From NCBI RefSeq assembly GCF_902459465.1, contig NC_047063.1, positions 18,414,001 through 18,478,000 on the forward strand: 64,000 nucleotides of DNA, given 5' to 3'. The first letter of the stretch is position 1. Every line of letters begins with the position of its first letter. Of the stretch, positions 59,945 to 61,969 are shown in pieces. Below the pieces are notes generated by a model. The model did no database searches and was not told the DNA's origin. It saw only the letters and a program-made list of their open reading frames with translations. This DNA comes from Asterias rubens. Lineage: Eukaryota. A program made the position numbers and the translations under genes.

Positions 59945-60060
59945 TGACGTCATTTATTGAGCAACTTCCCAGAAAGAGGAAAACAGGAAGTAATTTTGGG
60001 ACTTCCCCTAAAATCGCTGGCGTCGCCTATAAAACATTGGGCCAACTAGCTGTCACTGGT
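59945..60060 (+). promoter_or_regulatory. TATA promoter of the IRAK4-like gene with a CRE, GAS, ETS and NF-kB motif cluster
   Basis: TGACGTCA 59945-59952, TTCCCAGAA 59966-59974, CAGGAAGT 59984-59991, GGGACTTCCC 59998-60007, TATAAAA 60028-60034, Inr-like TCACTG with A at 60055, and donor AAG|GTAGGC at 60113/60114. Confidence 0.7.
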
Positions 60061-61969
60061 GCTACTGCTGGGTCGTGTACTATACTACATGTGTGTAAAA
60101 CATGTCAAGCAAGGTAGGCTAAAAAGTATGTCGCAATCTAATGTGGACTAATCCCTAATATAATCTGGTGGACGTGGATGACGAAACTCACAAACTCAGA
60201 ACTGCTGATTCTCCGATACCATCATCATGTTTTGACTTTACTTGTTTGAGTGACTGCATGAGTTTTTGACTGGCTGAGATCGTTCACACGCTCAGCACAC
60301 CTAGTTCTATCTAACCTTAGGGGTGAGTTCCATTGCCCATGTTGCCTGAGCACATGCATCTGACTGATTCTGACCTGACTTGTTATGAACACCACTTGTG
60401 TGGAAACAACTGTAAGTGTAAGTTAAGAAAAGTAAAACCCAGATAATATAACTCTTTCTCCAGGAGGACATAGGCCTATTTTATGATATACTTAAATTGA
60501 TAGTCGTTAGTTAGTCTTCTAAACTGGGCTCAATTTCAAAGCGCTGCTTGGATAGTAAGCAAATTTGTGTGCTTACTAATAGTAATACTATTAATTATTT
60601 TAAGGCAAACAAAATTGTTTTTTTTTTTAAAGCGTAATCATATTTCTCGGGTTAGCAAGGACATTATAAGCACCCAGCTTATGTTATGCATTCACCTTGG
60701 TTTGCGTTGTTTCCACCATTATTTTCATTCAGACACTGGACACTATTGGTAATTGTCAAAGACCAGTCTTCTCACTTGGTGTATCTCAACGTATACATTA
60801 AATAACAAACCTGTGAAAATTTGAGCTCAATTGGTCGTCGAAGTTGCGAGATAACAATGAAAGAAAAAACACCCTTGTCACACGAAGTTGTGTGCTTTCA
60901 GCTCCAGATGCTTGATTTCGGGACCTCAAATTCTAAATCTGAGGTCTCGAAATCAAATTCATGGAAAATTACTTCTTTCTCGAAAACTAAGTCACTTGAG
61001 AGGGAGCCGTTTCTCACAATGTTTTAGGATAACTTTCCGTATGGCGCCACCACCTTTTCACTCCTTTTTACAAAAGGGGATATCTCATTGAGGTAAATTA
61101 GATACTTTATTATTTCATATCGAATGAAAAAGTGGTGGCGCCATACGGAAACTTTTCCGTCCACTGCCTTTAAGTAATTGATAAAACGTGTCAGATTTTT
61201 GTAGTGGTAAGATTAGTAGAGAAAATCCATGGCACACTTTGAAAATTCTCAAACAAGTGTCTGATAGCTTTTTCAGTAATGATATGTATTATTCTATAGT
61301 AAGGTTTGCGGTAACACCATTAAAGGATCACGTTGCCTGCGATCGGACGAGTTGGTCTATAAAAAGCATCTGTAACCGTTTGTTATAAAATGCATATGAG
61401 TAACAAAGATGTTTTAAAGGAGAATACAATGATCCACACAAATTTGCCTCGAAATTGCATGGTTTTCCTTTTGCTTTGCGAACTAATACGGTCGGCCATT
61501 TATTTAGTCAAAAATTTGACTCCTATAAATTGCCCACCATGTATAGTCGACGAGGTAAAAGGAAAAACCATGCAATTTCGAGGCATATTTGTGTGGATCA
61601 TTATATTCTACTTTTAAAACATCTTTCTAACATGCATTTTATAACAAACGGTTACAAACGCTTTTCAAAGACCAACTCGAACGATCCAAGGCGTGTTCCA
61701 TTAATGATAATATCTAATTCTCAAGAAGAAAATCAGCTGATTAAAAAGTCGAGTTGAAACCTACATTTTTTTTCACTTAGAGATTATTATTACATGTTGT
61801 CACCGCAAACCTTTTGTATTTCCATTATGCAAAGTTTCAAATCTTACTTTTCATTTATTCTTCTTTTACTAGGTTTCACCCATATTCACCTTTGACATTT
61901 GTGTAGGAGAGAAATTGATTTCCACCCACTGTGACCTGTGAGGGTTCTGCACTCCATCAGCGACCAACC

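What the first reader, a model, noticed from the sequence alone, without database searches (positions are those of the whole stretch)
59945..60113. Compact NF-kB/GAS/ETS/CRE cluster plus TATA box in front of an IRAK4-like gene
Seen within 63 bp: CRE TGACGTCA, GAS TTCCCAGAA, GAAAGAGGAA (IRF-Ets composite-like, 59972-59981), ETS CAGGAAGT and a perfect kB site GGGACTTCCC. TATAAAA follows 27 nt before an Inr-like site. A second CRE is at 59685-59692 and a CTCF-like site at 59865-59878. Known: mammalian IRAK4 is broadly constitutive, whereas IRAK2 and IRAK3 are NF-kB-induced feedback components. Inference: this gene may be an infection-inducible node that integrates TLR and JAK-STAT signals.
Basis: partly seen in the sequence, partly recalled or inferred. 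Interest (0 to 1): 0.75.

Follow-up and report, generated by a model that had tools for sequence, protein, structure and literature searches.

The report
Sea-star IRAK4 promoter with conserved NF-kB site
This is the real promoter of the starfish (Asterias rubens) IRAK4 immune-kinase gene, and three of its control motifs (CRE, ETS and an NF-kB site) recur in the same order in a distantly related sea star, so NF-kB feedback on IRAK4 is plausible but untested.

Summary
Five motif classes within 100 bp occur nowhere else in the 64-kb window, and 0 of 300 simulated sequences reached even four classes.

The window is Asterias rubens. The downstream gene is a true IRAK4 orthologue of 518 aa, with a death domain and an intact kinase.

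RNA contigs from two Asterias-type species show no laid depth over 59867-60047 and begin at 60084-60086, which is 50-57 nt after the TATA box. The region is therefore a promoter.

- Exon 1 is non-coding and runs to 60411.
- The donor at 60113 is not used in any listed contig.
- ATG 60102 starts a 6-codon uORF; the CDS starts at 61970 in exon 2.

Patiria miniata has the same ordered module about 2.2 kb before its IRAK4 ATG: TGACGTCA, then CAGGAAGT, exactly 6 nt, a kB site, and a TAAAACA box at matching distance. Acanthaster keeps the CRE-like and ETS sites but has lost the kB site.

The GAS, IRF-Ets-like and CTCF-like sites are not conserved, and the second CRE lies in a transposon-like insert. 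NF-kB feed-forward control is plausible, since sea-cucumber IRAK4 is infection-induced. The JAK-STAT part is unsupported.

The scan has noted NF-kB-like promoter sites at other A. rubens loci, but not at this one.

The parts
59945..59952 (+). Full palindromic CRE (TGACGTCA), 113-140 nt upstream of the transcript start bracket
   Evidence: The window holds 6 such sites against 0.52 expected. Conserved 8/8 in Patiria (L002 7780-7787) and 7/8 in Acanthaster (AGACGTCA, L003 about 9044-9051).
59964..59974 (.). ACTTCC ETS core overlapping the GAS-type TTCCCAGAA
   Evidence: The window holds 31 TTCNNNGAA matches. Patiria has a TTCAGGGAA, but downstream of the ETS site and overlapping its kB site. Acanthaster has none in the module. 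Not positionally conserved.
59972..59981 (+).
   Evidence: Present. The half-site order is the reverse of GGAANNGAAA. No counterpart in Patiria or Acanthaster.
59984..59991 (+). ETS site CAGGAAGT, the first half of the conserved ETS-6nt-kB composite
   Evidence: Identical 8-mer in Patiria (L002 7840-7847). TAGGAAGT in Acanthaster (L003 9093-9100).
59998..60007 (+). kB site GGGACTTCCC (fits GGGRNNYYCC), 6 nt after the ETS site
   Evidence: One of 5 kB-pattern matches in 64 kb. Patiria has GGGAATCCCC exactly 6 nt after its CAGGAAGT (L002 7854-7863). In about 222 kb of held sequence, both strands, the composite occurs only at these two promoters. Expected 2.8e-5 by chance in the Patiria intergenic region. 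Lost in Acanthaster.
60028..60034 (+). TATA box (TATAAAA)
   Evidence: It lies 22 nt after the kB site. Patiria has GGTAAAACA 20 nt after its kB site. RNA contigs start 50-57 nt downstream.
60058..60411 (+). Exon 1 of IRAK4, non-coding. The 5' end is inferred. RNA contigs cover 60084/60086-60411, and the donor is CT|GTAAGT at 60411.
   Evidence: contigs from X1, X3 and X4 begin at 60084-60086 and run to 60307, 60413 and 60413. The X2 contig joins 60199-60411 directly to 61873. No laid depth over 59867-60047 in any of the 4 runs. Splice sites checked.
61873..62151 (+). Exon 2, with the IRAK4 start codon at 61970 (first half of the death domain)
   Evidence: Locus L001 position 10001, the annotated CDS start of P0001, equals window 61970.
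62852..63000 (+). Exon 3 (second half of the death domain)
   Evidence: joints. Pfam Death E=1.1e-6. Best solved-structure match is the IRAK4 death domain, 3mop_G, E=1.9e-6.
63799..64000 (+). Exon 4 (linker after the death domain), running off the window
   Evidence: The spliced translation of exons 2-4 equals residues 1-177 of P0001 exactly.
59378..59758 (.). 381-bp element flanked by inverted repeats (transposon-like). It has an internal 89-nt tandem duplication and contains the 'second CRE' (59685-59692).
   Evidence: 32-nt arms, 88% complementary, and direct repeats D1/D2.. RNA-contig word depth there is 10-100 times that of exon 1, as expected for a multi-copy element.
59865..59878 (+).
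   Evidence: 12 of 14 matches to CCASYAGRKGGCRS. No site with 2 or fewer mismatches in the equivalent 800 bp of Patiria or Acanthaster.

Best explanation
Window 59940-60040 is the proximal and core promoter of the Asterias rubens IRAK4 orthologue.

Shown:
- A non-coding first exon begins within about 60 nt downstream of the TATA box and is spliced at 60411 to exon 2. Exon 2 carries the real ATG at 61970.
- The ordered module CRE ... CAGGAAGT - 6 nt - kB - about 20 nt - TA-rich box is shared with Patiria miniata, a sea star of another order.
- The CRE-like and ETS parts are also shared with Acanthaster.

Inferred:
- ETS-family and CREB/ATF factors give the basal expression seen in all four RNA runs.
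- The kB site lets Rel/NF-kB raise IRAK4 transcription once Toll/IL-1R-type signalling is on. That would be a positive feed-forward loop on the top kinase of the pathway.
- The 5' leader of about 430-450 nt, with 10 upstream ATGs, probably damps translation.

The GAS, IRF-Ets-like and CTCF-like matches and the upstream CRE are not part of the conserved module.

My odds: it is the IRAK4 promoter, about 0.85. The CRE/ETS/kB module is under selection, about 0.7. The kB site confers NF-kB-dependent induction, about 0.45.
For: Motifs and their excess over chance.

Transcript structure: RNA contigs begin at 60084-60086 in three runs from two species. No laid depth over 59867-60047. Joints run 60411>61873, 62151>62852 and 63000>63799. 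All splice sites are GT-AG, and the spliced product equals P0001 residues 1-177.

Gene identity:
- Death plus Pkinase domains.
- Homologues carry the source name IRAK4 across animals, with Patiria at 57% and Acanthaster at 56% identity.
- Solved-structure matches: IRAK4 282 bits, IRAK1 117, IRAK3 90.
- Synteny RLF-like / IRAK4 / PFKFB is kept in three sea stars.

Conservation:
- The Patiria module lies at L002 7780-7890, and the three species are aligned in A1.
- The ETS-kB composite is found only at the two IRAK4 promoters in about 222 kb.
- Chance expectation is 2.8e-5 at fixed spacing and 5.6e-7 for spacing 0-15 nt with a CRE within 100 nt upstream.
- The Patiria kB site (GGGAATCCCC) has no GGAAGT core, so it is the kB consensus that is retained, not an ETS core.

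Analogy: sea-cucumber IRAK4 rises after Vibrio infection (PMC9811217, PMC4906609, PMC13673367). NF-kB and MyD88 contigs respond in a challenged sea star (PMC4503460).
Against: - No induction data exist for any sea-star IRAK4, and no binding data.
- The kB site is lost in Acanthaster. No homologous module was found within 10 kb upstream of the ATG in two urchins, a brittle star or three hemichordates.
- The plain local alignment score between A. rubens and Patiria is not above shuffled controls (15.5 against 13.8 +/- 1.3). The case therefore rests on motif identity, order and spacing, and part of that was defined after the data were seen.
- The exact TSS is not mapped. Contig ends at 60084-60086 would put the TATA box at -50 to -57, not at the canonical -30.
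- One RNA run holds 4 of 12 sampled words of 59925-60095, which hints at RNA or carried-over DNA upstream of 60086.
- The gene is expressed in all four RNA runs of unknown condition, so it is at least basally on.
- In the nearest relative (organism B), DNA runs hold only 7 of 12 promoter words. That shows no obvious extra constraint, and the changes could not be located.
Confidence: 0.6

Rival explanations
1. This is an ordinary constitutive promoter. ETS-family factors (three or four GGAAGT cores) and CREB/ATF drive steady expression. The 'kB' and 'GAS' matches are by-products of ETS cores or bind other factors. IRAK4 is not NF-kB-inducible in sea stars, as in mammals.
For: - The A. rubens GAS and kB sites both contain ACTTCC.
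- CRE plus ETS is the part conserved in all three sea stars, and Acanthaster lacks the kB site.
- S. purpuratus has a CCGGAAGT plus GTGACGTCAC pair, and no kB site, 5.7 kb upstream of its IRAK4 ATG.
- Transcripts are present in all four RNA runs.
- From general knowledge, ETS and CRE motifs close to the TSS are typical of broadly expressed genes, and mammalian IRAK4 is constitutive.
Against: - The Patiria kB site GGGAATCCCC has no ETS core, yet it keeps the kB consensus at the same 6-nt spacing from CAGGAAGT. Chance expectation is 2.8e-5.
- Sea-cucumber IRAK4 is infection-induced (PMC9811217).
- The promoter has a TATA box and no marked CpG enrichment (CpG o/e 0.69 over 59900-60084).
Confidence: 0.3
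2. The promoter integrates TLR/NF-kB and JAK-STAT/IRF inputs through the kB, GAS and IRF-Ets sites, with a CTCF boundary and a second CRE upstream.
For: All consensus matches are present. A TTCNNNGAA also occurs within the Patiria module.
Against: - The GAS match is at a different place and orientation in Patiria and is absent in Acanthaster.
- TTCNNNGAA occurs 31 times in the window.
- GAAAGAGGAA has the wrong half-site order and is not conserved.
- The CTCF-like site is only 12 of 14 and is not conserved.
- The second CRE lies in a transposon-like insert.
Confidence: 0.07
3. The cluster is a chance aggregation of short motifs, or a regulatory element serving the divergent RLF-like neighbour rather than IRAK4.
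For: - The motif classes were picked after the sequence was seen.
- The RLF-like gene is head-to-head. A probable first exon at 58656-58789 was seen in RNA contigs of organism B, about 1.3 kb away.
Against: - 0 of 300 simulations reach 4 motif classes.
- The module is conserved in Patiria at the same side and distance from IRAK4.
- IRAK4 RNA contigs start right after the TATA box, on the plus strand side.
Confidence: 0.03

Closest known systems
NF-kB-driven feedback on Toll/IL-1R pathway components (mammalian IRAK3/IRAK-M, IRAK2, NFKBIA; Drosophila Toll-pathway genes induced on infection). From general knowledge.
   Same: A kB consensus site in the proximal promoter of a Myddosome-type kinase gene, next to a TATA box. 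The expected logic is that pathway output regulates a pathway component.
   Different: The candidate target here is IRAK4, the apical kinase, which is regarded as constitutive in mammals. The predicted sign is positive feed-forward, not the negative feedback of IRAK3. Neither binding nor induction has been shown.
Apostichopus japonicus IRAK4 (AjIRAK4)
   Same: An echinoderm IRAK4 orthologue. It is reported as up-regulated in coelomocytes after Vibrio splendidus infection (PMC9811217; PMC4906609; table in PMC13673367).
   Different: It belongs to a different class (sea cucumber). The evidence there is expression data without promoter analysis, whereas here there is promoter anatomy without expression data. 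I could not fetch the sea-cucumber locus.
ETS/NF-kB composite enhancers (for example the HIV-1 LTR enhancer and cytokine-receptor promoters). From general knowledge.
   Same: An ETS site directly beside a kB site, upstream of a TATA box, with fixed short spacing conserved between species.
   Different: This is a single-copy cellular promoter of an invertebrate, not a viral LTR or repeat. Cooperation between the two factors is only inferred from the conserved 6-nt spacing.
CRE-plus-TATA promoters of CREB target genes. From general knowledge.
   Same: A full palindromic TGACGTCA within about 150 nt of the TSS, in a promoter with a TATA box.
   Different: cAMP or stress responsiveness is untested. 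TGACGTCA is generally over-represented in this window (6 against 0.52 expected).

Membership tests
IRAK4 (protein encoded downstream) | N-terminal death domain followed by a Ser/Thr kinase domain, with no long C-terminal extension | tested here: met
   P0001 (518 aa): Death 22-108 (E=1.4e-8), Pkinase/PK_Tyr_Ser-Thr 238-505. The kinase alignment reaches residue 506 of 518.
IRAK4 (protein encoded downstream) | Closer to IRAK4 than to IRAK1/2/3 | tested here: met
   Solved structures: IRAK4 282 bits, IRAK1 117, IRAK3 90. Death-domain half: IRAK4 E=1.9e-6, IRAK3 0.0034, IRAK2 0.07. Nearly all animal hits that carry a source name are called IRAK4; a few are unnamed or hypothetical proteins.
IRAK4 (protein encoded downstream) | Catalytic Lys, HRD and DFG motifs intact | tested here: met
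   CAVKKL, HRDVKSAN and DFG (position 378) align to human IRAK4.
IRAK4 (protein encoded downstream) | Tyrosine gatekeeper, the IRAK hallmark (Tyr262 in human IRAK4; from general knowledge) | tested here: not met
   The aligned residue is Phe in A. rubens, Patiria, Acanthaster, Amphiura and a brittle-star-like transcript (P0020; its nearest named relative is Amphiura IRAK4, 51%). This is a conservative aromatic change, and orthology is not in doubt.
TATA-box core promoter | TATA box about 25-35 nt upstream of the transcription start | tested here: inconclusive
   TATAAAA lies at 60028-60034. Laid RNA contigs begin at 60084-60086, and there is no laid depth over 59867-60047. The true 5' end lies somewhere in about 60048-60085. 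Contig ends are not TSS maps, and one RNA run holds some words upstream of 60086.
NF-kB (Rel) target promoter | Match to the kB consensus GGGRNNYYCC in the proximal promoter | tested here: met
   GGGACTTCCC at 59998-60007, one of 5 such matches in 64 kb.
NF-kB (Rel) target promoter | The site is conserved at the orthologous promoter of other species | tested here: inconclusive
   Kept in Patiria at identical spacing from the ETS site. Lost in Acanthaster. Not found in urchins, the brittle star or hemichordates within 10 kb of the ATG, except a lone GGGGACTTCCCC in Ptychodera.
NF-kB (Rel) target promoter | Rel-protein binding and stimulus-dependent induction | not testable with these tools
   Needs EMSA or ChIP and challenge experiments. 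The only evidence is by analogy with sea-cucumber IRAK4 (PMC9811217).
GAS / STAT-responsive element | TTCNNNGAA conserved in position in orthologous promoters | tested here: not met
   The consensus is present at 59966-59974, but there are 31 matches in the window. In Patiria a match lies on the other side of the ETS site, overlapping the kB site. There is none in the Acanthaster module.
Ets-IRF composite element (EICE) | GGAA - 2 nt - GAAA order of half-sites | tested here: not met
   The site reads GAAA-GA-GGAA, which does not fit GGAANNGAAA on either strand. There is no GGAANNGAAA match between 59300 and 60500, and the site is not conserved.
CRE (CREB/ATF site) | Full palindrome TGACGTCA near the TSS, conserved in orthologues | tested here: met
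   Window 59945-59952. Patiria 8/8, Acanthaster 7/8, at the same relative place upstream of the ETS site.
CTCF site | Match to the 14-nt core consensus, and conservation | tested here: not met
   12 of 14 matches in A. rubens. No site with 2 or fewer mismatches in the equivalent regions of Patiria or Acanthaster.

The most novel reading that the evidence does not exclude
In sea stars the apical Myddosome kinase IRAK4 is itself an NF-kB target, through an ancient ETS-6nt-kB composite that predates the split of Forcipulatida and Valvatida. Pathway feedback would then act on IRAK4, by positive feed-forward, in animals whose IRAK4 is the closest-matching IRAK. In vertebrates this role moved to the later paralogues IRAK2 and IRAK3, leaving IRAK4 constitutive. 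A leader with 10 upstream ATGs would add a second, translational, gate.
Probability: 0.3. Interest if true: 0.55.

Novelty: new member of a known kind. Interest (0 to 1): 0.38.

Why it matters
The finding gives a concrete, cheap test of how innate-immune signalling is wired in an invertebrate deuterostome. The target is a roughly 110-bp promoter with three conserved sites. Mutating them in reporters would show whether the top kinase of the Toll/IL-1R pathway is under NF-kB feed-forward control in echinoderms, unlike in mammals.

The work also corrects the 5' structure of the gene: a non-coding exon 1, the real start codon, and a uORF-rich leader.

It remains a promoter annotation with an untested regulatory inference. 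Infection-induced IRAK4 expression is already reported in a sea cucumber, so the surprise for a specialist is moderate.

Tried and rejected
1. In the listed contigs (most pieces were not shown) RNA runs through 60113 to the donor at 60411. ATG 60102 opens a 6-codon uORF.

2. My first rival, that everything is just ETS cores, is weakened. The Patiria kB site has no GGAAGT core.

3. Plain sequence alignment of the promoter to Patiria and Acanthaster gave nothing significant. BLAST E-values were at least 0.07, and Smith-Waterman scores matched shuffled controls. Only the motif-level comparison is informative.

4. Sea urchins were inconclusive. S. purpuratus has CCGGAAGTGCACGTA plus GTGACGTCAC 5.7 kb upstream, sharing a 13-mer with window 59770-59782. 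Nothing corresponding exists in L. pictus.

5. No module was found in the brittle star Amphiura or in three hemichordates. Ptychodera has a lone GGGGACTTCCCC 3.2 kb upstream, which is not significant by itself.

6. I tried to reach closer relatives' promoters through the protein index, using the spurious 57-aa ORF that spans the promoter. The search was blank. Fragment P0002 led only to an 898-nt metagenome scaffold carrying exon 3. P0020 is a brittle-star-like transcript.

7. Word shares for the promoter in DNA runs were 1.00 for organism C, 0.83 for D and 0.58 for B. This is too coarse to show constraint. Read laying was already used, so the changes could not be located.

8. The promoter is not a CpG island and is not repeated in the window.

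9. No paper in the held library uses the phrase 'IRAK4 promoter'.
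Full report
**Observation.**
- TGACGTCA at 59945-59952
- TTCCCAGAA at 59966-59974
- GAAAGAGGAA at 59972-59981
- CAGGAAGT at 59984-59991
- GGGACTTCCC at 59998-60007
- TATAAAA at 60028-60034
- a second TGACGTCA at 59685-59692

This is the only place in the 64-kb window where even three of the five classes (CRE, GAS, kB, GGAAGT, TATAAAA) fall within 100 bp, and all five are present. None of 300 first-order Markov simulations reached four classes. TGACGTCA occurs 6 times in the window against 0.52 expected.

Two cautions apply. The classes were chosen after the sequence was seen. 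The GAS and kB matches each contain an ACTTCC core, so they are not independent of the ETS class. The promoter stretch and exon 1 are single-copy in the window.

**Which gene.** The window is Asterias rubens: locus L001, GCA_902459465.3, is identical over 56001-64000. A search with the exon at 62853-62999 found a 518-aa protein, P0001, that is 100% identical. It has a death domain (22-108) and a protein kinase domain (238-505). Its homologues carry the source name IRAK4 throughout animals: Patiria miniata 57%, Acanthaster planci 56%, vertebrates about 37% over 96-98% of the length. Against solved structures it scores 282 bits with human IRAK4, 117 with IRAK1 and 90 with IRAK3. The catalytic Lys, HRD and DFG motifs are in place. 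The tyrosine gatekeeper of human IRAK4 is Phe in sea stars and brittle stars. 'IRAK4-like' is therefore correct, and this is the orthologue.

**Transcript structure.** I laid Logan contigs of four RNA runs on 58600-64000. Two runs are from the same species (organism A). Two are from a close relative (organism B), which differs by about 2% in exon 1.
- All four runs show no laid depth over 59867-60047.
- Contigs begin at 60084-60086 in three runs.
- The X2 contig joins 60199-60411 to 61873-62151, then to 62852-63000, then to 63799 onward.
- All introns are GT-AG, and the spliced translation from ATG 61970 reproduces residues 1-177 of P0001 exactly.

Exon 1 is therefore a non-coding exon ending at 60411. 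ATG 60102 opens a 6-codon upstream ORF. The leader is 424-451 nt long and carries 10 upstream ATGs, all closed before the main ATG.

The start of transcription lies between about 60048 and 60085. If the contig ends mark the true start, the TATA box would sit at -50 to -57. One RNA run of organism B also holds 4 of 12 sampled words of 59925-60095, although its laid contig starts at 60086. Some RNA or carried-over DNA may therefore reach further upstream.

**Conservation.** The order RLF-like (minus strand), IRAK4 (plus strand), PFKFB (minus strand) is the same in A. rubens, Patiria and Acanthaster.

From position 3000 up to just past the ATG (10300) of L002, it holds one strict kB match, one CAGGAAGT and two full CREs. 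One CRE and the other two sites lie together about 2.2 kb before the ATG:
- TGACGTCA at L002 7780-7787
- CAGGAAGT at 7840-7847
- exactly 6 nt later, GGGAATCCCC at 7854-7863
- 20 nt further, GGTAAAACA

In A. rubens the spacings are 6 nt and 22 nt, and the box reads TATAAAACA.

An ETS site followed within 15 nt by a kB site occurs only twice in about 222 kb of held sequence on both strands. Both occurrences are at these two promoters. A Markov-1 estimate for the 6.6-kb Patiria intergenic region gives 2.8e-5 for the fixed spacing, 4.5e-4 for spacing 0-15 nt, and 5.6e-7 when a CRE within 100 nt upstream is added to that. The Patiria kB site contains no GGAAGT core, so the kB consensus itself is what has been kept.

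Acanthaster is closer to Patiria than to Asterias. It keeps two CCAAT boxes, AGACGTCA and TAGGAAGT in the same order. At the +6 position it reads CAGCAATTCG, so the kB site is gone.

Ordinary alignment scores between the promoters are not above shuffled controls. The argument rests on motif identity, order and spacing.

**What is not conserved.**
- The GAS match lies upstream of the ETS site in A. rubens. In Patiria it lies downstream, overlapping the kB site. It is absent from the Acanthaster module.
- GAAAGAGGAA has no counterpart elsewhere, and its half-sites are in the opposite order to the Ets-IRF composite GGAANNGAAA.
- The CTCF-like site matches 12 of 14 core positions and has no equivalent in the other two species.
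- The second CRE lies inside a 381-bp element bounded by 32-nt inverted repeats (59378-59409 and 59727-59758). The element has an internal 89-nt duplication and multi-copy RNA-contig depth. It is probably a transposon insertion.

**Wider comparison.** Within 10 kb upstream of the IRAK4 ATG I found no homologous module in S. purpuratus, L. pictus, the brittle star Amphiura, or the hemichordates Saccoglossus, Ptychodera and Glandiceps. S. purpuratus has an ETS plus CRE pair 5.7 kb upstream. Ptychodera has a lone GGGGACTTCCCC 3.2 kb upstream. Neither is significant alone, and promoters may lie beyond the fetched flanks.

**Mechanism.** Shown: a TATA-containing promoter with a conserved CRE / ETS / kB module in front of a non-coding first exon of IRAK4. 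Inferred: ETS and CREB/ATF factors set basal transcription, since transcripts are present in all four RNA runs. Rel/NF-kB, acting through the kB site beside the ETS site, would raise transcription when the pathway is active, giving feed-forward amplification. The uORF-rich leader would limit translation.

Support by analogy comes from the literature:
- IRAK4 mRNA rises in sea-cucumber coelomocytes after Vibrio splendidus infection (PMC9811217).
- IRAK4-like is among the up-regulated genes in skin ulceration syndrome (PMC4906609), and the review table in PMC13673367 lists it as 'Up'.
- NF-kB, MyD88 and an IRAK-annotated contig respond in a challenged sunflower star (PMC4503460).

No sea-star induction or binding data exist, and no paper in the held library analyses an IRAK4 promoter. 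The main rival is a constitutive ETS/CRE promoter in which the kB match has no NF-kB role. I put that at about 0.3.

**Verdict.** The promoter call and the NF-kB part of the interpretation are supported as hypotheses with cross-order conservation. The exon model, the JAK-STAT/IRF integration, the CTCF site and the second CRE are not supported. This is a new example of a known kind of regulatory logic, and the interest is moderate.

Other notes from this scan report NF-kB-like promoter sites at other A. rubens loci (s1-150147, s1-150139, s1-150200). I did not test them, and they are not independent evidence for this locus.

Noticed in passing
window 60085-60411 and 61873-61969: The IRAK4 5' leader (424-451 nt) carries 10 upstream ATGs. 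All open short uORFs (2-31 codons) that close before the main ATG at 61970, whose context is CCAACCATGC. This suggests translational control.
   Followed up: partly
window 59378-59758: A 381-bp element with 32-nt terminal inverted repeats (88% complementary) and an internal tandem duplication (59466-59554 / 59589-59675, 94%). RNA-contig word depth is 10-100 times that of the neighbouring exon, so the element is probably a multi-copy MITE-like transposon inserted just upstream of the promoter.
   Followed up: partly
window 60591-61857 and 62220-62762 (IRAK4 introns 1 and 2): Very high-copy repeats. Summed RNA-contig word depths reach 10^5-10^6 at 60591-61133 and 10^3-10^4 at 62220-62762, with hundreds of aberrant joints. 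A 63-nt inverted repeat pair lies at 61027-61158.
   Followed up: no
window 58656-58789: RNA contigs of the close relative (organism B; 1234-nt and 370-nt records) place a 134-nt piece here. It is probably a 5' exon of the head-to-head RLF-like gene, whose CDS ends at about 56127 on the minus strand. The two divergent genes would then start about 1.3 kb apart.
   Followed up: no
L001, L002, L003 (A. rubens, Patiria, Acanthaster); L009-L011 (hemichordates): The gene order RLF-like(-)/IRAK4(+)/PFKFB(-) is conserved in three sea stars. In three hemichordates IRAK4 instead lies head-to-head with a GSAP-16-domain gene.
   Followed up: no
P0001 residue aligned to human IRAK4 Tyr262 (outside the window): The tyrosine gatekeeper typical of IRAK kinases is Phe in A. 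rubens, Patiria, Acanthaster, Amphiura and a brittle-star-like transcript (P0020; nearest named relative Amphiura IRAK4, 51%).
   Followed up: partly
window 59770-59782 and L005 4282-4294 (S. purpuratus): The 13-mer GGAAGTGCACGTA is shared between the A. rubens region upstream of the IRAK4 promoter and a site beside a GTGACGTCAC, 5.7 kb upstream of the S. purpuratus IRAK4 ATG. It is absent from L. pictus, Patiria and Acanthaster, so it may be chance.
   Followed up: partly
L010 6763-6774 (Ptychodera flava): A palindromic kB site GGGGACTTCCCC, with the same core as in A. rubens, lies 3.2 kb upstream of the hemichordate IRAK4 ATG. No CRE or CAGGAAGT is nearby.
   Followed up: no
window 2660, 16004, 23169, 55432, 59685, 59945: The full CRE palindrome TGACGTCA occurs 6 times in the window against 0.52 expected from dinucleotide shuffles. 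The other four sites were not examined.
   Followed up: no
L007 (ENA metagenome scaffold, 898 nt); runs X14-X18: Marine and macroalgal metagenome data sets hold sea-star IRAK4 sequence: an exon 3 fragment 97% identical, and promoter word shares of 0.92-1.00. This is presumably environmental or host DNA of Asterias-type sea stars.
   Followed up: no
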